A program made the position numbers and the translations under genes. A stretch of 13,786 nt of DNA. It comes from Fonticula alba ATCC 38817 (taxonomy: Eukaryota > Protista > Nucleariida). Location of the stretch: NCBI GenBank assembly GCA_000388065.2, contig KB932203.1; one strand, given 5' to 3'. The notes below the pieces were generated by a model. That model was not told the DNA's origin. It was given only the letters and a program-made list of their open reading frames with translations, and did not search any database. Every line of letters begins with the position of its first letter. Position 1 is the first letter of the stretch. Positions 867 to 13,786 of the stretch are shown here, piece after piece.

Positions 867-937
867 GCGTCGATGGTTTAGTGGTAGAATTGCCGCCTGC
901 CACGCGGTAGACCCGGGTTCGATTCCCGGTCGACGCA
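867..937 (+). tRNA. tRNA-Gly-GCC: tRNA-Gly (anticodon GCC)
   Basis: Complete cloverleaf: acceptor GCGTCGA/TCGACGC plus discriminator A, D-loop AGTGGTA, anticodon stem GCCGC/GCGGT with loop CTGCCAC, T arm CCGGG-TTCGATT-CCCGG. No intron and no encoded CCA. Confidence 0.98.
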
Positions 938-943
938 CATCTC

Positions 944-1025: not shown

Positions 1026-1202
1026 GCACCACGGGATCGATCAAGCTCTAAGCGGGTGCGCGTGTGAGGGCGGCAGCCCGCTGGTTTTGTGGTCTCGGCG
1101 CGGATGCCCGTATGATTCCGGGCGGGATGTTCCTTGCTACATGGTACGCTTGACCGGGGTGTTTCTTGGAGGCGCGAGTGCAAGGTGAGAAAGTGGTTAT
1201 GC

Positions 1203-1430
1203 GAAAGGGAGGGGGAGGGGGAGGGGGAGGGGGAGAGAGGGAGAAAGGGAGAGAGGGAAATAAGGAGAGAGAGAGAAAAAGAGGGAGAGAAAAAGAGGGA
1301 GAGAAAAAGAGGGAGAGAGAGAGAGGGAGAGAGAGAGAAAAAGAGAGAGAGAGAGAGAAAGGGAAAGAAGGAGAGAGGGAGAGAGAGAGAAAAAGAGAGA
1401 GAGAAAAAAAGAGAGAAAGACGAAGAGAAG
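1203..1430. repeat. Polypurine (GA-rich) low-complexity tract
   Basis: 228 nt with only two pyrimidines (1261, 1421). Contains (GGGGGA)4 at 1211-1234 and (GAGAAAAAGAGGGA)3 at 1273-1314. Confidence 0.95.
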
Positions 1431-1585
1431 CATTGACATGTGCGCATGTGTATTTGGGCGACCGAAATGGGCCAAGGCGTTGAGAACAAGGCAGGTATAA
1501 GGAGAGAGACACACACACATGGGGGTACACAGCATCAGGATCCCGCCTCCGGCTGGGCCGCCGGACCAGTGGCAGCAGGAGGCCA

Positions 1586-1609
1586 GGGGGGGAGGGGGGG
1601 GGGGGGGGG
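1586..1609. repeat. G7-A-G16 homopolymer tract, about 75-100 nt past the stop codon of the large gene
   Basis: Directly visible G runs. Confidence 0.85.
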
Positions 1610-1682
1610 ATGGACGTGCAGCGTGCAGGCAGGGCCAGCCACCCGGGGGGCGGAATGGATGGCGGCGTTGCTTGCTTTCCTT

Positions 1683-4600
1683 TCAGACCGGAACAAAGAG
1701 GTTGCGGTTGAGGAGATGCGCGGGGAAGGCCTGGGGGGCCTTGACCTTCGGACGAGAGGGGCTGCCCTCGAAGCAGGACACCAGGAGGGCCCCGTTGGAG
1801 GCGGGAGTGGTGTCCGAGGAGGAGGAGGAGGAGTAGTAGTTTTGGTAGGGGTTGGCATAGTGGTGGCTGGAGCTGGTGCGCTCCAGGCGAAGCATCGTCT
1901 GGCTGGCCAGGTGGAAGAGGGCCTCCCGGACATCGGGCGAGGGGATGAGCTGGCGAGCGGCGGCCGCGCTGCCGGCGGTGGCCGGGTGCCCCTCGACCGG
2001 CGAGAAGGCCAGGGCACTGGCGAGGAGATGCAGGGCGGCGAAGAGCCGAGCCGAGCAGGAGAAGTGGCCGGTGCCGCCGGTGGGCAGGGGGGCCGCCACG
2101 CCGAGGGCACGAGTCAAGCCGGAGCACAGGATGGCATGGGTCCCGAAGGCGCGCAGATCTTCGACATTGCTGACGGACCCATCGCCACTGGGGGCCTTGG
2201 CGCCGAGGACCATGCGCTGGGTGGTGAAGAGCTGATCGGCCGGGGTCAGGCCGAAGGCATTCTCCGACAGGAGAGCCTGCCGGAGGAGGGCCCAGTCCAC
2301 ATGGGCCAGGGGGCTGCCAGCCGAGGCGGCGGTGGTCGCTTGGAGGATGGCCCCGACCGAGGCATTGTCCCCGGAAAGGAGGCCCAGCAGGGCATCGGCC
2401 ATGGTGTGCACGGTGTCGGAATTGGCCGCGGTCGCCGCCGGGCCAAGCGCATGGATGGCCGCCGCCAGGCCCAGGGCCAGGATCATCTCGCAGGCCAGGA
2501 GGAATTGCGAGAAGCGCAGGGCCACATGCAGGGAGGTGTCCCCACCGGCGGCGGTCCGGTGATCCGGGTGGAAGAGCTCGGCCCGGGCCAGCAGCAGCTG
2601 CCCCGGGTTCGGGCTGGCGGTGGCAAACCGAGCACGAGCCAGGGCCAGGGCCATCTCGTGGAGAACCCCATGGGCATCACGCTCGGCGGCCAGGTGCACC
2701 GGGCTCAGGCCGGACACCGGGCTCCGGGCGAAGATCGCCTGGCGCAGGGCGGCCAGCTGGGTGGCCGCATCGGCCGAGGGGCCGGCGGCGGCGGCGGCGC
2801 GCTGGACCACGCTGTCCAGCAGCAGGGCCGCCGCGGCCGGCTGGTGCGCATGGGCCGCATGGTGGAGGGGGGTCCACCCGCGGAAGGCGTCCATCTGGCT
2901 GGGATCCGCATGGAGGTCGGCCAGCAGGCCGGCGGTGGCATCGGTCAAGCCCAGCCGAGTCGCCAGGGACAGGGGGCTGAGGGCGACATCGCGCGTGCAG
3001 AGCACCGCCAAGGGCCGGTCCTCCGAGGTGCTGGTGGTCCAAGCGGCCAGGCTGTTGGGCTTGGCCTCGGCATCGAGGGCCAGGCCGATGGCCGCCAGGT
3101 CGGTCAGCTGGCCGGAGGACAGGGAGTACGGGGCCGAGGTGAGGATGTCCCGGAGGAGGGCCAAGGCCGGGCGGGAATTCAGCAGGGTGACGGCCGACAC
3201 GGCGGTGGTGTACTCGGTGCGGCTGTCCCCGCTGGAGGTGCCCATCGGGGCCACCTTGAGCACGGTGTCCAATTGGAAGAGCGACCGCTCGAGGGGGGCC
3301 GTGGTGAGGAAGACCTCGCGACCGAGGGCGCGGAGGATGCTGCGCTCGGTGTCGGGGACCATCTCGGCCAGGCGGGCCACATCCGGCGCACCGCGAACCA
3401 GGAGCTCGGAAGCCGGCCGGCGCTCGGTCGTGCGGTTCCAGAACTGGGCGAATGCCTGGCGCGGGGCCGGGTCGGTGGCCAGCCAACGGGCCAGGTCCTC
3501 ATGCCCGGCCAGCAGGGCCACCGTGGCCGGCGGCAGGAAGCTCAAGGGATGGTGGGCCCCATGGCCACCGATGATCGGGGAGTCGATGTTGTTGAAGCCC
3601 TCCGGCCGGGCGCCCGGGCCACCGGACAGGGCCACCAGCGTCAGCATATTGCGCGCCGACCGGTCGATCCCCTCGCCGCCCTCGGCCGCCGGCAGGAAGA
3701 GGGACGTCTTGCTGGACCGGGTGAGGACCGTGTGGCGACGGACCTCGGCCACGGGGACATCCGCCGGCAGGGGCCAAACCGCGAAGTTGACCCCGGCACC
3801 GAAGCGCCGAAGCAGCAGCAGCAGCACCGACTGAGGCAGGCCCATGGCCACGGCCATGGCAAAGGGCAGGGGGTTGTCCTCGGCGTCGGCGGCAATGTTG
3901 GAGGCCAGGCGCTCGGCCAGCTGCATCACCGGCGGGGCATAGGTCGAGTGGCCCTGGAGCCGGGCCGCCAGGCGGTCCAACCGCGTGACGGTATCCTCCA
4001 CCAGTCGCAGGCCATTGAGCAGGGCCAGCACCAAGGCCAGGGCATGGTCCTCGCCGCCGGGCAGGCCGGCCGCATGGAAGAGCGTCTCATTGAGGATGTT
4101 CAGGGAGACCGATTGCGAGGGCGACAGGCCCAGGTAGGCATCGGTGGAGGTCCGATGCCGGAGGAAGTCCTGGGCCGGGGCATCCCCGGTGGCCGGGGCC
4201 CGGCGGTCATCCCACTTGGCCAGGGTCTTCAAGGTGGGCAGGGGCTCCTGGCCGGAGGAATCGGCCGTCCGACGGGCATGGCGCGAGTACCAGCGGTTGT
4301 GGGAGGAAGACTGGCGGAAGGTGCTGGCCATGTCCTCATTCAGCAGGTGCATGCCGGCCATTTGGGCATCGGTGTGGCCGGCCCGGCGCCGAGCGGCCGG
4401 CAGGAACCCATGCTGCCGCAGGAACCCCTCCACCGGGTTGGTGGAACTGAAGCGCAGGTGGCCAATGCGCTCGGCCTTGGCGGCAGCCGGGTCATCGGCA
4501 TCGGGCTTCTTCTGGCTGGCGGCGCGCTGGGCCAGGCGATTGGCCCGGCTGGCCCGGCTGAAGGCCCGCTGGGCGGCCTCCGCCTTGGACATGGACGCCG

Positions 4601-6738
4601 AGGAGGCCAGCATGTCACGGCCCATGGCCATGCTGAGGGCCCCCTCATCGAAGTAGCAGGTGTCATCGTCGGAGAAGTCGGAGCACTCGTCATCATGGCC
4701 GGCGAAGCCGGCGGCCAGCAGGCTGACATTGTTGACGCGGGCCGCGCGCTTGGCCGCCGAGTCGGCCGTCTCCGAGGCGGCCTGGGCCGCGACGCGCATG
4801 GCCGCGCGGCTGAGCTTCGGCCGGTACTGGCTCGCCATCCGGGACAGCAGCAGCTCCACCATGGGGGCCGGGTGGTCCAGGAAGCGCAGGGCCACACGCA
4901 GGGGGGTGGTCTTGGAGGAGCCGCCCATGCGCGAGTCGACCAGGGCCACACTGGCACCATGCTTGGTGGTGTCGGTCAGGTCGGCCACGCGGTCCAGGTC
5001 CCCGGCGAAGACCGCCTCAAAGAGGGCCCGGTAGATGGCCTCATTGGCCTCGCCCTTGACCGGCTGATCGCCGGCCACAAACTGGACCCGGGCCACATCC
5101 GACACATTGGCCATCCGGCGGCGATGAGGGTGGCGCTTGGCGGACTTGCGCGCATGAGGGGTGGACTTGGAGCCGGGGGACTGGGCCGCGGCATTCAGCC
5201 CAAGCAGGGCCTTGGCATTGGCTTCGCGAGCGGCGGCCTCCGCGGCGAAGGTCACCAGGCGCTTGAGGGTGGCAGGCAGCACGGCCAGGGCCGACGCGGC
5301 CAGGCGCCGAGTGAAGGACTCGAGCTCCGGCTCGGCGGTGATGTGCTGCTGGCCGCCCAGCTCCCGGGCCAGGGCCGCCTGAATGGCGGCCGGGGTGAGG
5401 GTCTTGCTCAGGGCGTCGGCCTCGCGAGCGGTGATCCGGCTCCAGCAACGGTTGGAATACTCGTTGACCAGCTGGGTGGCCAGCTGGGTCGGGTCATCGA
5501 AGCCCAGCCGGCGCACGCGCTTGGGCTGGGGATCGGGACCGACCGCCGCCGGGTAGGTGAGGGTGAAGGTGGTGCTCATGCCGAAGCGGGTGGCCAGCAT
5601 CCGGCGCATGTCATCCAGGCGACGGAAGGCATCCATGCGCTGGTGGCGCGCGGCGTCGGCCACCGTGTCGATGGCCTCATTGGCGGTGGCCAGGATGTCC
5701 GGCCGCAGGCGAGCCATGACCTTGGGGGTGGAGTGGCCGCCGCGCTGGGCATTGGCCAGGGCGGCAAAGTGCTCGGCGTCGCGATCGTCAGCGCGCTCGC
5801 CGGCCGGCAGGCCGAGCATGTAATTGATGACGGCCAGGTCGTGCAGGAGGATGGTCAGCAGGGCGCCCGGGGGGGTGGATGGCGAATCCGCCGACAGGGC
5901 CTCATGGCGGGCGATCTCGCGCAGGATCTGCCGACGAGTGCGCATGCCCGCCAGGACCGAATGGATGCCGGTGGTGGAGAAGAGCTCCGGCGTGTCGAAC
6001 AGCCCCTGCGGAGAGCGGACCTTCCGGGCTTGGCGATCGCGCAGGCGGATGGCATTGCGCAGGATGAACACATGGTCGTCATGATCAGACAGCCGGGAAT
6101 CCGGCATCGCCTGGCCGGTGACATCCCCGGCGGCCAGCCACAGCAGGGCATCCGGAGCCGGGCGCTCGTGGACAAAGTCCTCATGGTCGGCCGGGTGGTC
6201 GCCCTGCTCGATGAGATCCCCATCGATGTCGATGTCGACCGATGCCTGCGCCGGCTCGGGGGACTCATCGTCATCGGAGCCGGACGAGGAGGCATCGTCC
6301 ATGGTGGAATCGGCCGAGGACTTGAGGGTGGCCAGGGCGGCGGCATACTCATCGCGCATGGCCTGCTTGATGGCACGCATGGCGGCCCGGATGTCGGCCA
6401 CCTCCACATCGGAGCTGTTGACATCCACCTCATTGAGGGCGGTCTCGGTGTTCAGCTCGGTGTGCGTGTAAATCTGGTCCACCAGGTCGAAGAGCTCCGG
6501 CGCGGCGGCGCGCAGGGAGGCCAGCTGCTCGGTGTTGTGGTTGCAGGCGTAAATCATCTCCGCGGCGGCGGACACCACGAAGTCCACGAGGTTGCATGCC
6601 GGGGCCAGGCCGACGGCCGGGTTGAAGGTGACATCGGCCACCAGGGGGGCATTTCGAGACCGCGGAGGCGGGCGCTTGTTGGAAGAGCTGTAGGCGCTGG
6701 CGACGTTGTTCAGCTGGTCGCGGAAGGTGGCCGGCATG
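1683..6738 (-). CDS. Last exon: ankyrin-repeat and Ala-rich helical region
   Basis: Open from the acceptor (TTGCAG|C ATG CCG) to TGA at 1685-1683. Ankyrin-like motifs include KTTPLRVALRFLDHPAPMVELLL (~4850-4915), GWTPLHHAAHAHQPAAAALLL (~2815-2879), GLSPVHLAAERDAHGVLHEM (~2652-2711), GDTSLHVALRFSQFLLACEMILALG (~2470-2547) and ENAFGLTPADQL (~2230-2268). Confidence 0.88.
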
Positions 6739-9700
6739 CTGCAAGGTGCGCGGATGAGCGGGGGGAGACAGGGGGAAAAAAAGGAAAAAAGGAAGCAGGT
6801 GAGCATGACACGCCGGAGCCGGGGAAGAAGCCGACCCCCGCCCGGGGGGAGGAGGCAGGCACACAAGGGCAGGCAGGACGCACCGAGACACGCTCTGGAA
6901 GACGATCGACACCAGCGACGACTCCAACGCCTGGAGGATGAGCTCCAGCACCCGCGGCAGGCGGGCCGTCAGGGCCAGGTGATGAGGCTGAGTCTCGAGG
7001 TTGAGGCTGGAGTAGCCGCGCTCGGCGCTGTACGGCCGGCGGTCGGTCCACACGGCCATGAGCAGCTCCTTGGAGGCATTCAGGTGGGACATCTGCACGA
7101 TGGCCGGGGTGCCGAGGCGGAGCAGGGCCTCGACCGTGTCGGCGGTGAGCTGCTCGCGGGCAGCACGGCCCAGCCCCTCGCGCAGGATGACCGGCATGCT
7201 CCGCCGGCCAAAGTCCGCGGCCAGCTGGAAGCCATACCGAATGGCCAGGGACAGGGGGTTGAGCTGGCCGATGGTGACATGCGCCAGCAGCGGGGCCAGG
7301 ACCTCCGGGGGGAAGCACTTGCCGACGAAGTCGGTCAGCAAGTCCGCCCGCAGGCGGATGGCATACACCCCGATGACATTCAGCTGGCTGGTCAGCAGCA
7401 TGTCAACCAGGTTGGCCGGCTGCGACCGGGTGGCGGTCGGGGAGTCGACATCGCGCTGGGCAATCGGCACCAGGTCCACGCCCTCGACCAGGAGCCGGGC
7501 CAGGGACACGGCGATGGTGCTGTCCTCCACGAAGGCCACCAGCATCAGGGGGGTCATGGCATCGCGGTCGTTGTTGGCGAAGGGCAGGCACGGCCGCGAG
7601 GCATTGGCCCCATGGGCCAGGAGCACCCGCGCGCAGGCCACACTCCCGAAGAGCACGGCATAATGCAGCGGGGTCAGATGGCCGTCCCAATCCTCGCAGT
7701 CCACCGAGACAAAGGCCTCGCGGATGGTCACCGAGGCCTTGGGATCGGAGGCGCTGGCCACGCTGACCTTGTAGGTCTTGGTGACATGGGGATCGGCGTC
7801 GTCATCGGATTCGGCCATCTCCATCATGTCCTCGAGCTCGGACCCATCGGAATCGGAGCCCTCGGAGCCCTCGGACCCATCGGAGTCGGAGCCGTCGGAG
7901 CCCTCGGAGCCGTCGGAGTCGGAGCCCTCGGAGCCGGAGCCCTCGGAGCCGGAGCCCTCCTCCTCCTCCTCCTCCTCGAGGTCCATGTCGGCGGTGCCGG
8001 GCGAAGAGGCGCGCGCACTGTCGGCGATGGCCAGCGAATGGCGCACGGCCGCGGCCTTGGCCTCATCGCCATCCTGCAGGTCGGAGGAGGGGCGCGCGCG
8101 CTTGACCCCGGGCGCGGAGCCCTCGCGAATGCGACGGGCCTCCAGAAGCAACTCGCGCACTTGGTGATTGTACTCCAGCAGGTCGGCCAGAATCTCCGGG
8201 CGATTGTAGTGCGCAGCAAAGTGCAGCGGGGTCCGGCCATTGAAGGCGCGCTCCGAGAGGTTGGGCTGCACATGCTCCGGCAGGGGCAACTCCAGGCAGG
8301 GCTCCAGCTCGGCCAGCAGGCGGCGATCGGCCTCATCGGTCAGGTCTTCCACATGGCCGGAGCAGCGCAGGCGCAGGACCGCCGCCCGCAGGGACCGCAG
8401 GCCGGCATCCAACAGGGCCTGGACCAATTCCCGGCGATTGGCCAGCACGGCCAGGATCAACGGAGTCCGGCCGAGGGAGTCCCGGGAATCCAGCCGCATG
8501 CCGATCATGTCCTCCAGGCGCTTGGTGGCGCGGTCCTGGGCCACCGTGGCCAGGGCATGGGCCGACCGGGCGGCCGACAGCCGCGCGGCCCAGGCAGCCT
8601 CATCGGCCTCCGGGGACTGGGGCCCATCGAGGTCCATGGAAGCGGCGGCGGCCGCCTTGCCGGCCTGGGCCTCCTCCACGGCGGCCAGGGCATCGGCCAG
8701 GGCCCGGTCGGCGGCGACCTTGTCAGCGCGAGCGGCATCCCGCTCGCGGACAAAGCGCTCGGACTCCAAATCCAGGGCCTGGCGGAAGAGGGCCATGTTG
8801 CCGGTGGCCGCGGCGGTGGCCAGCAAATCGGTCGACTCATCGAGGAAGGCCGGCTCCAGCCAGTCGCCATCGGTGATGGGCCGGAAGGAGCCGATGGACT
8901 GGCGGCCCGGGTCATCGGCCAGGAAGGTCAGGGACCCATAGACGAAGGCCGACTCGTTGATGTCGAAGTCCGAGGGGAAGGGCGGGCAGAAGCCACAGCA
9001 GTCCTCCAGCACGGTGGACATCCGGCCGACGAAGCACGGATGGGTGTGGTAGGTCTTGGTCCGGTCGAACCAGGGGGAATTGAGCATGGTGTCCTTGCCC
9101 TCCATGAGGGTTTGGATGCTCTTGGCATTCCAATTGGGGCCCCAGGGCAGGAAGACCGTGGCATAGTCGGACAGCTCGCTGATGTCGGTGCCCATGAGCC
9201 GGTCCCGGAGGAAGGCATCGCTGCTGAGGCGGTTTTCGATTTGCTGGCGAAGGTACCCCCCGGCGGAGGGGGTCCCGACGAGGCTGTTGCCAGACCCGAG
9301 GGCATCCTTGGACTCGTTGCGCATGCGCCGGAGGCGCTGCTCATCGCGGTAGTTCTGGATGGCGGCCGGCGACCGGAGGCGCTCCAGGAGAATGAGCCGG
9401 GCCAGGCCCTGGACCCGGTCGAAGGAGCGCTCCAGGATTTGGGGATCCACACGGGCCAGGTCGTAGTAGGGAGTGCGCACGGCAAAGCCACGGGCCGCAT
9501 ACTTGGACAGCCGGGTCTCGTAGGAGGGCGACCGCCGGGACATGTCGATGGTGTTGCGCTGGAACACCAGGGACGCATGGGCACGCGGCATGGCGTACAC
9601 CTGCCGGCCGTCGAAGGCCACACTGGAGCAGTCCACATCGAAGCCCATGAGCACCTCGGCCGGGGAGGCATACCGGCGGAGGACAATCTGGATGTGCCGG

Positions 9701-10410
9701 TAGGGGAACTGGCTGACGATGGACACGGCGTACTTGGACCGGAAGACCAGGGCCGCGTGGGGGATGGCATTGGAGATGGCCTCGTACAGCTCGACGAGCT
9801 TGGCCCGGGCGGCCTCCTCATCCAGGCCGTAGATGAAGAGATCGATGTCGGACGACCGGTACAGCATGTTGTGGTAGATGTAGCGCTGGCGCTTGGGGGA
9901 GATGGCCTCGCCCGGGGCGGTGGCCGTGGCGCCGATGAGCATGCGGGTGGAGGAGTCCACCTGGAGCGAGGCCCGGGCCTTGGCCACCTGGCCCGAGGGC
10001 ACGTCGGCATCCTCCATGAAGGTGGAGGAGGTCTCCGGGTCGAAGACCGGCATGAGGCTGGCCAGGACCGAGCCACCGGCCACCACGACATTGTCCCAGT
10101 TGACATAGCGCAGGGAGTTCTCGGTGAAGAGCTCCCAGTTCTGGTGGAAGGCGGCAAGCGAGCCGGCGGTGACCGGCTGGCCGGGGGCCTTGCGGAAGCG
10201 ATTGCCCTCGGTGCTGTCGGCGAACATCATCCGGAAGAGGGGCTGGCCATCCGGGCCGAGGGCGGCCTCCTCGTTGGCGTCGCGAGCGACCAGGGCCTCG
10301 GGGGCCTGGTCGAAGAGGGGGATCATCATCAGGTGGGGATCCTTCAGGTCGGCATGGTCGCGGTGCTGGGCGAACAGGGTGCGGTAGTGGTTCTCGCGAT
10401 CGATGACGGC
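1683..10410 (-). CDS. Large multi-exon protein (at least 2,860 aa): N-terminal nucleotidyltransferase-like domain plus ankyrin-repeat arrays; join(complement 6884..10410, 1683..6738), 5' end incomplete
   Basis: The two long ORFs join in phase across a GT-AG intron: 3527 + 5056 = 8583 nt = 2861 codons including TGA. Strong G/C third-position bias; ankyrin TPLH-type motifs in both exons; NTase-like motifs in the 5' exon. Confidence 0.85.
6739..6883 (-). other. Spliceosomal intron, 145 nt, phase 2
   Basis: Donor CG|GTGCGT at 6883, candidate branch site GCTCAC followed by a long T/C tract, acceptor TTGCAG|C at 6739. Splicing restores the frame (…FQSVS-R-MPATFRDQ…). Confidence 0.88.
6884..10410 (-). 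CDS. Large internal exon: NTase-like domain, His/Cys cluster, first ankyrin repeats and acidic tract
   Basis: Starts after a CTCAC…CCCTCCCAG acceptor (phase 0, AVIDRENHYRTLFAQ…). Ankyrin motifs GRTPLILAVLANRRELVQALLDAG (~8401-8472), GRTPLHFAAHYNRPEILADLLEY (~8170-8238) and LTPLHYAVLFGSVACARVLLAHGAN (~7600-7678). Confidence 0.88.
7838..7977 (-). repeat. Coding tandem repeat: acidic Ser/Gly/Glu/Asp tract (EEEEEEGSGSEGSGSEGSDSDGSEGSDGSDSDGSEGSEGSDSDGSE)
   Basis: On the plus strand, repeated GGAGCCCTC/GGAGCCGTC/GGACCCATC 9-mers with 6-nt spacers, all frame-preserving, plus a (TCC)n run. Confidence 0.9.
9484..10110 (-). other. Nucleotidyltransferase-like domain (Pol-beta superfamily, with class II CCA/poly(A) polymerase-like features)
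   Basis: NVVVAGGSVL (GGS at 10069-10077), SSDIDLFIYG (DID at 9841-9849), RHIQIVLR, EVLMGFDVDCSSVAFDG and RLSKYAARGF. These fit the hG[GS]…hDxDh NTase signature, recognised by eye. Confidence 0.6.
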
Positions 10411-10461
10411 CTGGGAGGGGTGCGGTGGGTGTGAGTGGCCGGGAGCGCGCCGGGGGCGAGG
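10411..10461 (-). other. 3' end of an intron upstream of the large exon
   Basis: The minus strand reads …CACTCACACCCACCGCACCCCTCCCAG|GCC: branch-like CTCAC, pyrimidine-rich tract and CAG acceptor. Confidence 0.7.
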
Positions 10462-10972
10462 NNNNNNNNNNNNNNNNNNNNNNNNNNNNNNNNNNNNNNN
10501 NNNNNNNNNNNNNNNNNNNNNNNNNNNNNNNNNNNNNNNNNNNNNNNNNNNNNNNNNNNNNNNNNNNNNNNNNNNNNNNNNNNNNNNNNNNNNNNNNNNN
10601 NNNNNNNNNNNNNNNNNNNNNNNNNNNNNNNNNNNNNNNNNNNNNNNNNNNNNNNNNNNNNNNNNNNNNNNNNNNNNNNNNNNNNNNNNNNNNNNNNNNN
10701 NNNNNNNNNNNNNNNNNNNNNNNNNNNNNNNNNNNNNNNNNNNNNNNNNNNNNNNNNNNNNNNNNNNNNNNNNNNNNNNNNNNNNNNNNNNNNNNNNNNN
10801 NNNNNNNNNNNNNNNNNNNNNNNNNNNNNNNNNNNNNNNNNNNNNNNNNNNNNNNNNNNNNNNNNNNNNNNNNNNNNNNNNNNNNNNNNNNNNNNNNNNN
10901 NNNNNNNNNNNNNNNNNNNNNNNNNNNNNNNNNNNNNNNNNNNNNNNNNNNNNNNNNNNNNNNNNNNNNNNN
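10462..10972. other. Assembly gap 1 (511 N)
   Basis: Run of N. Confidence 1.
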
Positions 10973-11006
10973 CCGGAGGAGCCCAGCCCATGCGTGGGAC
11001 ATCGAC
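10973..11006. repeat. 34-nt sequence identical to 13753-13786
   Basis: CCGGAGGAGCCCAGCCCATGCGTGGGACATCGAC occurs exactly at the right edge of gap 1 and exactly at the window end. Confidence 0.97.
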
Positions 11007-11637: not shown

Positions 11638-11643
11638 TATATG

Positions 11644-11715
11644 TGCTCATTGGGTGGATCGAACACCCGACCTCCAGTTTACTAGACTGGCGCTCTACCA
11701 CTGAGCTAAACGAGC
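11644..11715 (-). tRNA. tRNA-Thr-AGT: tRNA-Thr (anticodon AGT)
   Basis: Minus strand: GCTCGTT TA GCTC AGTGGTA GAGC G CCAGT CTAGTAA ACTGG AGGTC GGGTG TTCGATC CACCC AATGAGC A. Complete cloverleaf with anticodon AGT; an A34 anticodon for Thr is typical of eukaryotes. Confidence 0.98.
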
Positions 11716-12379: not shown

Positions 12380-13297
12380 NNNNNNNNNNNNNNNNNNNNN
12401 NNNNNNNNNNNNNNNNNNNNNNNNNNNNNNNNNNNNNNNNNNNNNNNNNNNNNNNNNNNNNNNNNNNNNNNNNNNNNNNNNNNNNNNNNNNNNNNNNNNN
12501 NNNNNNNNNNNNNNNNNNNNNNNNNNNNNNNNNNNNNNNNNNNNNNNNNNNNNNNNNNNNNNNNNNNNNNNNNNNNNNNNNNNNNNNNNNNNNNNNNNNN
12601 NNNNNNNNNNNNNNNNNNNNNNNNNNNNNNNNNNNNNNNNNNNNNNNNNNNNNNNNNNNNNNNNNNNNNNNNNNNNNNNNNNNNNNNNNNNNNNNNNNNN
12701 NNNNNNNNNNNNNNNNNNNNNNNNNNNNNNNNNNNNNNNNNNNNNNNNNNNNNNNNNNNNNNNNNNNNNNNNNNNNNNNNNNNNNNNNNNNNNNNNNNNN
12801 NNNNNNNNNNNNNNNNNNNNNNNNNNNNNNNNNNNNNNNNNNNNNNNNNNNNNNNNNNNNNNNNNNNNNNNNNNNNNNNNNNNNNNNNNNNNNNNNNNNN
12901 NNNNNNNNNNNNNNNNNNNNNNNNNNNNNNNNNNNNNNNNNNNNNNNNNNNNNNNNNNNNNNNNNNNNNNNNNNNNNNNNNNNNNNNNNNNNNNNNNNNN
13001 NNNNNNNNNNNNNNNNNNNNNNNNNNNNNNNNNNNNNNNNNNNNNNNNNNNNNNNNNNNNNNNNNNNNNNNNNNNNNNNNNNNNNNNNNNNNNNNNNNNN
13101 NNNNNNNNNNNNNNNNNNNNNNNNNNNNNNNNNNNNNNNNNNNNNNNNNNNNNNNNNNNNNNNNNNNNNNNNNNNNNNNNNNNNNNNNNNNNNNNNNNNN
13201 NNNNNNNNNNNNNNNNNNNNNNNNNNNNNNNNNNNNNNNNNNNNNNNNNNNNNNNNNNNNNNNNNNNNNNNNNNNNNNNNNNNNNNNNNNNNNNNNN
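12380..13297. other. Assembly gap 2 (918 N)
   Basis: Run of N. Confidence 1.
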
Positions 13298-13752: not shown

Positions 13753-13786
13753 CCGGAGGAGCCCAGCCCATGCGTGGGACATCGAC
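13753..13786. repeat. 34-nt sequence identical to 10973-11006
   Basis: Exact match, ending at the last base of the window. Confidence 0.97.

What the first reader, a model, noticed from the sequence alone, without database searches (positions are those of the whole stretch)
1683..10410. Giant nucleotidyltransferase-like / ankyrin-repeat fusion protein of unknown function
Seen: one reading frame of at least 2,860 aa with an N-terminal GGS…DID / FDVDC / RLSKYAARGF domain, followed by about 10 ankyrin-type motifs spread over roughly 2,200 aa. Established: Pol-beta-superfamily NTases include CCA enzymes, poly(A) and TUT polymerases, OAS/cGAS second-messenger synthases and protein AMPylases; ankyrin arrays are protein-binding or sensor modules. 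Inference: an enzyme-plus-repeat-sensor architecture like that of innate-immunity or signalling proteins, with the NTase activated or targeted by the ankyrin arrays. From memory, similar motif sets occur in fungal proteins annotated only as 'ankyrin repeat protein' and in some large DNA viruses; this recollection is unverified. Automated annotation would probably miss the catalytic domain.
Basis: partly seen in the sequence, partly recalled or inferred. Interest (0 to 1): 0.75.

Follow-up and report, generated by a model that had tools for sequence, protein, structure and literature searches.

The report
Giant Gad2-type nucleotidyltransferase–ankyrin gene
This is a real, spliced gene of about 2,900 residues in the amoeba Fonticula alba, with an intact nucleotide-transferring enzyme domain at its front end. 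The domain belongs to the family Pfam calls Gad2, which is widespread in fungi and giant viruses, and whose substrate is unknown in any organism.

Summary
The gene is real but is not one unbroken frame. On the minus strand, exon 2 (10410-6884) and exon 3 (6738-1686) are joined across a 145-nt phase-2 intron, giving 2,860 residues. A first exon of about 32-35 codons is hidden in the N run at 10462-10972.

The first 540 residues match proteins carrying Pfam PF26128 ('Gad2') at E down to 1e-124. These come from fungi, other protists and giant-virus MAGs, and many are fused to ankyrin repeats.

- AGGS, SDIDLF, GFDVD and RRSPSYE are invariant or nearly so across the family.
- Pfam confirms ankyrin repeats at four places.
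- About 1,160 residues of exon 3 have no relatives outside Fonticula among 1.84 billion proteins.

The genome holds four colinear paralogs, two of them annotated as single proteins with introns at the same positions, so the two halves are one gene. The scan has already reported the other three paralogs on other DNA.

Verdict: a new member of a catalogued family of unknown function. Most likely it is an active RNA 3'-end nucleotidyltransferase on an ankyrin scaffold, but this is untested.

The parts
10462..10972 (.). Run of N that most likely hides exon 1 (about 32-35 codons including the ATG) and most of intron 1.
   Evidence: Paralog proteins P0121 and P0122 have 35 and 32 residues before the point that aligns with window nt 10410. 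No match to these residues exists elsewhere in the window.
10411..10461 (-). 3' end of intron 1: pyrimidine-rich tract ending in the acceptor CAG at 10413-10411.
   Evidence: Read from the sequence. P0121's own gene has a 111-nt intron at exactly this position, just before DLIDRENH.
6884..10410 (-). Exon 2: 1,175 codons plus 2 nt. It holds the nucleotidyltransferase domain, a C-terminal subdomain, ankyrin repeats and low-complexity inserts.
   Evidence: Translation. It is 63% identical and colinear with residues 37-1173 of P0121.
9376..10410 (-). Gad2-family (PF26128) nucleotidyltransferase domain, residues 1-345, with head and neck like class-II CCA-adding enzymes. The core is residues 85-345.
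10069..10080 (-). AGGS motif (residues 111-114), the G[GS] turn between strand 108-111 and helix 113-119.
   Evidence: G112 is nearly invariant in the alignment. Secondary structure comes from the model.
9886..10047 (-). Fonticula-specific insert of about 54 residues (122-175) between the GGS and DID motifs. It is predicted disordered.
   Evidence: Absent from fungal, protist and viral homologs in A1. pLDDT is about 48-67. Present in all four paralogs at 61-80% identity, so it is coding and not an intron.
9835..9852 (-). SDIDLF (residues 187-192), the DxD catalytic carboxylates on strand 189-194.
   Evidence: S187, D188 and D190 are at least 90% conserved. A weak Pfam Polbeta match is centred here.
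9628..9642 (-). FDVDC (residues 257-261). D258 and D260 are invariant and are candidates for the third catalytic carboxylate.
   Evidence: Invariant columns in A1 and A2. The assignment as third carboxylate is inference.
9484..9537 (-). RRSPSYE-x-RLSKYAARGF (residues 292-309), the invariant basic/aromatic signature of the family.
   Evidence: R292, R293, S294, Y297, E298, R300, L301, K303, Y304 and R307 are invariant or nearly so.
8836..9165 (-). Conserved C-terminal subdomain of the family (residues 416-525). It contains HTHPCF and DCCGFCP (8983-9048), a possible metal-binding cluster.
   Evidence: Conserved block in A1. pLDDT is 82-94. Metal binding is inference only, and the Cys cluster is not kept in the viral homologs.
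8398..8502 (-). Ankyrin repeat (exon 2 residues 637-671, GRTPLILAV).
   Evidence: Pfam Ank_2/Ank_5 match.
8167..8241 (-). Ankyrin repeat (exon 2 residues 724-748, GRTPLHFAA).
   Evidence: Pfam Ank and Ank_3, E 1.1e-10.
7828..7977 (-). Acidic Glu/Ser/Gly/Asp low-complexity insert (exon 2 residues 812-861).
   Evidence: Translation. The 9/15-nt repeat family D3. Not conserved in P0121.
7540..7719 (-). Two ankyrin repeats (exon 2 residues 898-957, LTPLHYAV and MTPLMLVA).
   Evidence: Pfam Ank_2, Ank_4 and Ank_5.
6739..6883 (-). Intron 2: 145 nt, phase 2, GTGCGT donor, pyrimidine tract, CAG acceptor.
   Evidence: Read from the sequence. The frame changes from minus-1 to minus-2 here. The annotated paralog P0121 has an intron at the aligned position, residues about 1175-1177.
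1686..6738 (-). Exon 3: 1 nt plus 1,684 codons. It is Ala/Leu-rich and predicted all-helical. The stop TGA is at 1685-1683.
   Evidence: Translation. It is 50% identical and colinear with P0121 residues 1207-2771. All four paralogs keep it open.
3138..6617 (-). Fonticula-only region (exon 3 residues 41-1200) with conserved blocks at 201-320, 561-640, 881-1040 and 1081-1160. It contains degenerate ankyrin-like motifs (YRALFEAVFAGDLD, TTPLRVAL, NPLPFAMAV).
   Evidence: A profile of the four paralogs finds only P0121 and P0122 among 1.84 billion representatives. No Pfam match. The Atlas language-model features look ankyrin-like at 0.94, which is a lead only.
2517..2981 (-). C-terminal ankyrin cluster (exon 3 residues 1253-1407: SPLSLAT, WTPLHHAA, LSPVHLAA, TSLHVAL).
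   Evidence: Pfam Ank_2 E 1.9e-7 for residues 1253-1308. The last two units are seen at motif level only.

Best explanation
The window holds one of four paralogous, intron-containing genes of Fonticula alba, each encoding a protein of about 2,800-2,960 residues.

Shown:
- The first roughly 540 residues are a Gad2-family (Pfam PF26128) nucleotidyltransferase.
- It has a Pol-beta-type catalytic head and a helical neck most like class-II CCA-adding/poly(A)-type enzymes and TENT5.
- It also has a family-specific C-terminal subdomain.
- The catalytic-type residues (G-S turn, DxD, a further invariant DxD in GFDVD) and a basic RRS...R..KY..R signature are kept.
- This core is the most conserved part among the paralogs.

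Inferred:
- The enzyme is active.
- It transfers nucleotides to a 3'-hydroxyl of an RNA, either tailing or repairing the 3' end. I put this at about 40-45%.
- The ankyrin repeats and the long helical, Fonticula-only tail act as a scaffold that brings the enzyme to its target or partners.

The family was inherited vertically in Holomycota (Fonticula plus fungi). It was quadruplicated and inflated with inserts in Fonticula.
For: Gene model:
- Frames and splice signals.
- Colinear 63% and 50% identity of both exons to the single annotated protein H696_03796 (P0121).
- P0121 maps at 100% to G000:C6 and has introns at both equivalent positions.
- A second annotated paralog, P0122 of 2,959 residues, covers both halves.
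- Four colinear loci exist in the genome.

Family:
- 165 hits, best E 4.5e-124, nearly all carrying PF26128.2 and many also Ank.
- The Atlas names PF26128 'Gad2'.
- Giant-virus homologs are found in IMG/VR and BFVD, with Fadolivirus at E 1.3e-35.

Fold:
- AF2 pLDDT 80, pTM 0.82.
- phrog_1614 matches 21 of 31 family members, best E 3.5e-7. It is a phage nucleotidyltransferase family that also detects Fonticula's own CCA-adding gene and rings in the same control bacteria as PF01743.

Activity:
- Motifs are invariant or nearly so.
- The core (residues 176-345) is 91-94% identical among paralogs, yet 17-20% of four-fold sites differ. This indicates purifying selection.

Nucleic-acid-end lead:
- One family member (P0105) is fused to polynucleotide kinase/3'-phosphatase domains PF13671 and PF08645.

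Descent:
- In the domain tree the four paralogs form one clade (100*), placed next to a fungal clade whose branching follows fungal phylogeny.
Against: - No substrate or activity is known for any member. Even phage Gad2 is only an AlphaFold-predicted nucleotidyltransferase with unknown mechanism (bioRxiv 10.1101/2023.05.01.538930; PMC13728456).
- No sequence-level match to solved nucleotidyltransferases.
- No match to PF01743.
- The class-II motifs that recognise ribose and base were not identified, so RNA 3'-end addition is an analogy from fold only.
- I could not inspect model coordinates, so the convergence of GGS, DxD and GFDVD on one pocket is inferred from secondary-structure order, not measured.
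- I could not compare directly with a phage Gad2 sequence. tblastn against 50,697 phage records found nothing.
- The role of the ankyrin and helical tail is untested. Its AF2 model was unusable (pLDDT 35).
Confidence: 0.85

Rival explanations
1. A sensor-coupled second-messenger synthase of the OAS/cGAS/CD-NTase kind. The repeat arrays would detect a ligand and switch on synthesis of a cyclic or linear oligonucleotide signal.
For: - The architecture is an enzyme plus repeats.
- The catalytic core is conserved while the tail is fast-diverging and lineage-specific across four paralogs, as in many immune sensors.
- The family includes a phage anti-defence protein and many giant-virus copies fused to BTB, F-box, VWFA or ankyrin modules.
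Against: - No Mab21, OAS or CD-NTase family match.
- No candidate receptor or effector for a signal was seen.
Confidence: 0.1
2. A nucleotidyltransferase that modifies a protein or small molecule (AMPylation-type) or blocks tRNA acceptor ends like MenT/TglT toxins, rather than an RNA-tailing enzyme.
For: - Ankyrin, BTB, F-box and TPR partners in the family are protein-binding modules.
- MenT/TglT toxins and antibiotic nucleotidyltransferases appear among the weak fold matches.
Against: - The best matches, including the helical neck, are to enzymes that extend RNA 3' ends.
Confidence: 0.15
3. A catalytically dead nucleotidyltransferase-fold scaffold (like the DZF domains of NF45/NF90) that only binds partners or RNA.
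For: - NF90/NF45 appear among the weak fold matches.
- A Fonticula-specific, predicted-disordered 54-residue insert lies between the GGS and DID motifs.
Against: - D188 and D190 are at least 90% conserved, and D258 and D260 are invariant, across fungi, protists and viruses.
- The core is 91-94% identical among paralogs despite synonymous divergence.
Confidence: 0.05
4. Two separate genes wrongly joined: a nucleotidyltransferase-ankyrin gene ending near 6,880 and an independent gene starting at the ATG at 6737.
For: Exon 3 begins with an ATG one base after the acceptor. No transcript data for this locus were available here.
Against: - Exon 2's frame has no stop near the junction and runs open into junk sequence.
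- Canonical splice signals restore the frame.
- All four paralogs keep the same order of parts.
- Two of them are annotated as single proteins spanning the junction, one with an intron at the same place.
Confidence: 0.03

Closest known systems
Pfam PF26128 'Gad2' family: eukaryotic and giant-virus members such as Fonticula alba H696_03796, chytrid and Dikarya 'ankyrin repeat proteins', and the Fadolivirus 1,496-residue ankyrin protein
   Same: - The same domain, with 37-48% identity to non-Fonticula members over up to 540 residues.
- The same invariant motifs.
- The same fusion to ankyrin repeats directly after the domain.
   Different: - This protein is about twice as long.
- It has a disordered insert inside the catalytic domain.
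- It has Ala-rich and acidic low-complexity inserts.
- About 1,160 residues of the tail are found only in Fonticula's four paralogs.
Phage Gad2 (Gabija anti-defence 2, Bacillus phage SPbetaL7; Yirmiya et al., bioRxiv 10.1101/2023.05.01.538930)
   Same: It gives the Pfam family its name. It is also a predicted nucleotidyltransferase with unknown substrate.
   Different: - Gad2 is a stand-alone phage protein of about 400 residues that blocks the bacterial Gabija system.
- Fonticula has no known Gabija.
- Direct homology to Gad2 could not be tested here. There was no tblastn match in 50,697 phage records, and no Gad2 sequence was available by reference.
Class-II tRNA nucleotidyltransferases / poly(A) polymerases (PF01743; e.g. 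PDB 3wfo, 3h37, 1miv, 1ou5)
   Same: - It has a G-G/S turn and a DxD strand.
- phrog_1614, a phage family of this type, matches at sequence level.
   Different: - No PF01743 match.
- No PDB hit by sequence or profile.
- The family's own signature (GFDVD, RRSPSYE) replaces the class-II motifs.
- The body and tail domains that hold tRNA are absent, replaced by a different subdomain and ankyrin repeats.
TENT5/FAM46 non-canonical poly(A) polymerases (PDB 6jyj, 7cqz)
   Different: Only 10-11% identity, no family match, and a different domain context.
cGAS/OAS/CD-NTase signalling synthases
   Same: The same broad Pol-beta superfamily.

Membership tests
Pfam PF26128 (Gad2 family) | Significant similarity over the whole domain to proteins that carry PF26128. 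| tested here: met
   165 hits, best E 4.5e-124, and nearly all of the 120 listed carry PF26128.2. The HMM itself is not in the local Pfam copy, so the test is through its members and not the model.
Pfam PF26128 (Gad2 family) | The family's invariant motifs: AGGS, SDIDLF, R-x-HIQIVLR-x-Y, GFDVD, RRSPSYE-x-RL-x-KY-x-x-RGF. | tested here: met
   All are present in the window protein. They are invariant or at least 90% conserved in alignments A1 (31 sequences) and A2 (30 sequences).
Pfam PF26128 (Gad2 family) | Direct homology to the founding phage protein Gad2, and anti-Gabija activity. | not testable with these tools
   No Gad2 sequence was available by reference. tblastn against the phage collection found nothing. 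The activity needs a phage-bacterium assay.
Pol-beta superfamily nucleotidyltransferase | A mixed alpha/beta core with the G[GS] turn after strand 1 and DxD on strand 2. | tested here: met
   [not shown]
Pol-beta superfamily nucleotidyltransferase | A third catalytic carboxylate that converges with DxD and G[GS] on one site. | tested here: inconclusive
   D258 and D260 are invariant and lie 68-70 residues after the DxD. Model coordinates could not be read, so the geometry was not measured.
Class-II CCA-adding / poly(A) polymerase family (PF01743) | A match to the PolyA_pol head-domain model and its motifs for ribose and base recognition. | tested here: not met
   No PF01743 match even at E up to 10. 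The model does find Fonticula's real CCA-adding gene elsewhere in the genome. There is structural resemblance only.
cGAS/OAS/CD-NTase | Fold and family match to Mab21/OAS/CD-NTase enzymes. | tested here: not met
   [not shown]
Ankyrin repeat proteins | Pfam Ank-clan matches above the gathering score. | tested here: met
   On the whole exons, Ank scores 59.7 bits and Ank_2 59.8 bits on exon 2, and Ank_2 29.6 bits on exon 3. On the pieces, four separate stretches are located.

The most novel reading that the evidence does not exclude
The eukaryotic Gad2-type nucleotidyltransferase-ankyrin proteins are conflict enzymes.
- The conserved catalytic head would nucleotidylate or tail an RNA (for example a tRNA or a viral RNA 3' end) or a nucleotide-sensing factor during infection.
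- The fast-diverging, lineage-specific tails of the four Fonticula paralogs would be recognition modules.
- The many giant-virus copies (fused to BTB, F-box, VWFA or ankyrin) and phage Gad2 would be viral versions of the same chemistry, used against host defence.
Probability: 0.12. Interest if true: 0.8.

Novelty: new member of a known kind. Interest (0 to 1): 0.4.

Why it matters
PF26128 is a strongly conserved, apparently active enzyme family. It is found across fungi (including human pathogens such as Paracoccidioides and Aspergillus relatives), other protists, many giant viruses and phages. No substrate or reaction is known for any member.

Fonticula, as sister lineage to fungi, shows that the ankyrin fusion predates fungal diversification. 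Its four inflated paralogs offer natural variants with a near-identical catalytic core and divergent tails.

Identifying the reaction would annotate hundreds of 'ankyrin repeat' and 'hypothetical' proteins. It could also explain how phage Gad2 defeats Gabija.

This locus adds little beyond the three paralogs the scan has already reported.

Tried and rejected
1. Pfam (local copy), NCBIfam and PDB sequence searches with the N-terminal domain gave nothing significant. PF26128 is not in the local Pfam.
2. A PDB profile search with alignment A1 was swamped by ankyrin hits from the homologs' tails. Repeating it with a domain-only alignment gave no hits.
3. tblastn of the core against 50,697 phage records gave no match. 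A motif scan of 185,579 bacterial and archaeal genomes found no relative. The link to phage Gad2 therefore rests on Pfam's family name only.
4. phrog_1614 was considered as a stand-in for Gad2. It behaves as a CCA-adding-like phage family, so it supports the class-II-like relationship and not the Gad2 link.
5. An AF2 model of exon 3 residues 541-1684, built from the four paralogs, had pLDDT 35 and pTM 0.30. It was unusable and was not searched.
6. Profile-profile comparison of the Fonticula and giant-virus proteins aligned only the enzyme domain and the first ankyrin repeats. Pairwise BLAST gave weak colinear hints further on (E 0.004-0.007), which I do not count.
7. An intron reading of the 54-residue insert in the catalytic domain was rejected, because it is conserved as protein in all paralogs.
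8. The plus-strand ORFs 1440-6941 and 6706-10434 were rejected as antisense artefacts.
9. A viral-insertion origin was rejected. The gene has host GC content, conserved introns, and a tree position beside the fungi.
10. The exons were searched separately, by reference.
Full report
**What is in the sequence**

The window is about 70% GC with two runs of N (10462-10972 and 12380-13297). At this GC content many frames stay open, so ORF length alone means nothing. Only two minus-strand frames give protein-like translations.
- Frame 1 runs from 10410 down to about 6886.
- Frame 2 runs from 6737 to the TGA at 1685-1683.
- The plus-strand ORFs over the same DNA translate to G/R/P/A-rich strings and are antisense shadows.

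Between the two frames lies a 145-nt segment, 6883-6739. It has a GTGCGT donor, a pyrimidine tract and a CAG acceptor. Removing it joins 'CG' to 'C' as an Arg codon and restores the frame. So 'one reading frame' holds only after splicing.

Upstream of 10410 there is another CAG acceptor, and the N run begins 49 nt further on.

**One gene, four paralogs, Fonticula alba**

Exon 3 finds a single protein in the 5.8-billion-sequence word search: P0121, 'hypothetical protein H696_03796 [Fonticula alba]', 2,773 residues.
- P0121 is colinear with exon 2: 63% identity, its residues 37-1173.
- P0121 is colinear with exon 3: 50% identity, its residues 1207-2771.
- P0121 maps at 100% to another contig of the window's own 31.3-Mb assembly. 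This identifies the genome and makes the window's gene a paralog.
- P0121's gene has a 111-nt intron exactly before DLIDRENH, the point where the window's exon 2 starts. It has a second intron at residues about 1175-1177, the window's intron 2 position.

Six-frame searches of the genome find four loci, each with the enzyme domain followed by the long tail in the same order. All tails are open over about 1,600-1,680 codons. A second annotated paralog, P0122 (2,959 residues, on contig C1), also spans both halves. It has 32 residues before the exon 2 equivalent. The window's exon 1 is therefore almost certainly inside the N run.

**The N-terminal domain**

The local Pfam, NCBIfam and PDB sequence searches see nothing significant. 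The only hints are a weak Polbeta match at the DID motif and phrog_1614 'nucleotidyltransferase' at E 1.1e-4.

The word-indexed search with residues 1-540 gives 165 hits, the best at E 4.5e-124. Nearly all are precomputed as PF26128.2, and many also carry ankyrin families. They come from:
- chytrids, Zoopagomycota, Glomeromycota, Ascomycota and Basidiomycota;
- Ectocarpus and Acrasis;
- EukProt transcriptomes.

The Atlas names PF26128 'Gad2'. IMG/VR holds nine giant-virus MAG loci. Three of them are single ORFs of 1,509-1,553 residues with ankyrin repeats right after the domain.

Other partners seen in the family:
- TPR (P0071, P0088);
- BTB (P0120, and several giant viruses);
- VWFA and F-box (giant viruses);
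- in one case, polynucleotide kinase/3'-phosphatase domains (P0105).

The alignments show these invariant or near-invariant positions:
- G112, S187, D188, D190, R224, Q241, R245, Y247;
- G256, F257, D258, D260;
- R292, R293, S294, Y297, E298, R300, L301, K303, Y304, R307.

**Fold**

AlphaFold2 with 31 sequences gives pLDDT 80.3 and pTM 0.82. Low confidence is confined to a Fonticula-specific insert (residues 122-175), a linker (370-412) and a short loop at 501-507.
- Foldseek against the PDB ranks only Pol-beta-type enzymes, led by class-II tRNA nucleotidyltransferases, but weakly (best E 1.7e-3).
- Against predicted viral structures the matches are strong. Fadolivirus ankyrin protein scores E 1.3e-35 with TM 0.71, and 65 hits fall below E 1e-3. 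They include giant-virus CCA-adding enzymes.

phrog_1614 matches 21 of 31 family members, best E 3.5e-7. It also detects Fonticula's own CCA-adding gene, and it rings in nine of the ten control bacteria in which PF01743 rings. This gives a sequence-level bridge to class-II-type enzymes.

The domain is therefore a nucleotidyltransferase of the Pol-beta superfamily. It is nearest in shape to enzymes that extend RNA 3' ends, but it is not a member of PF01743.

**Constraint**

Across the four paralogs, the catalytic core (residues 176-345) is 91-94% identical while 17-20% of four-fold sites differ. Flanking segments are 60-89% identical, and the tail is 43-59% identical. The core is the part under the strongest purifying selection. 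This argues for an active enzyme and not a dead scaffold.

**The rest of the protein**

Pfam confirms ankyrin repeats at exon 2 residues 637-671, 724-748 and 898-957, and at exon 3 residues 1253-1308. Further TPLH-like motifs are visible only by eye.

A profile of exon 3 residues 41-1200 from the four paralogs was scored against all 1.84 billion cluster representatives. It finds only the two annotated Fonticula paralogs. This roughly 1,160-residue region is lineage-specific.
- Language-model features resemble ankyrin proteins at 0.94, which is a lead only.
- The AF2 model is all-helical but unusable, with pLDDT 35.

**Descent**

In a maximum-likelihood tree of the domain (46 rows, quick search), the four paralogs form one clade (100*). 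They sit beside a fungal clade that branches chytrids, then Zoopagomycota, then Glomeromycota, then Dikarya. One giant-virus clade lies inside the same well-supported group. This fits vertical inheritance in Holomycota with duplication in Fonticula, plus exchange with viruses. The root is arbitrary, and the long viral branches are unreliable.

**What is known**

Gad2 was defined in Bacillus phage SPbetaL7 as a 400-residue protein needed to overcome Gabija.
- It is toxic when expressed.
- AlphaFold predicts it to be a nucleotidyltransferase.
- Its mechanism is unknown, and a November 2026 review still says only that.
- I found no paper on the eukaryotic or giant-virus members.

The scan's own notes show that the other three paralogs were already reported, with the same reading. 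Those notes are not independent evidence, but my own tests agree with them.

**Verdict**

The nucleotidyltransferase reading is supported. The cGAS/OAS-like signalling analogy is not favoured.

The locus is a new member (the fourth paralog) of a catalogued but functionally unknown family. My best mechanistic guess, at about 40-45%, is template-independent nucleotide addition to an RNA 3' end, directed by the ankyrin/helical scaffold. It rests on fold analogy and on one kinase/phosphatase fusion, and it needs biochemistry.

Noticed in passing
window 867-938 (+) and 11643-11715 (-): tRNA-Gly(GCC) and tRNA-Thr(AGT) genes flank the giant gene. Both are confirmed by ARAGORN and Rfam.
   Followed up: yes
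window 10973-11006 and 13753-13786: An identical 34-nt string occurs directly after the first N run and again at the window's end, 2,780 nt apart. It may be a dispersed or tandem repeat or an assembly join. A second N run lies at 12380-13297.
   Followed up: no
window 1168-1443: A purine-rich (AG / GGGGGA) microsatellite of about 275 nt lies just downstream of the gene's stop codon.
   Followed up: no
window 9886-10047 (exon 2 residues 122-175): A 54-residue, predicted-disordered insert sits between the GGS and DID motifs of the catalytic domain. It is present in all four Fonticula paralogs and absent from fungal, protist and viral homologs.
   Followed up: partly
G000:C8:1611945-1612667 (L018, L019): Fonticula's ordinary class-II CCA-adding enzyme gene (PF01743), split by an intron. 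It is also detected by phrog_1614.
   Followed up: partly
P0105 (841 aa, ENA metagenome protein): A PF26128 domain is fused to AAA_33 kinase and PNK 3'-phosphatase domains (PF13671, PF08645). This is the only fusion seen that points to nucleic-acid end processing.
   Followed up: no
L001, L003, L004 (giant-virus MAG contigs): Single ORFs of 1,509-1,553 residues have the same enzyme-then-ankyrin layout. In the domain tree they fall inside the Fonticula-plus-fungi group, which suggests host-virus exchange.
   Followed up: partly
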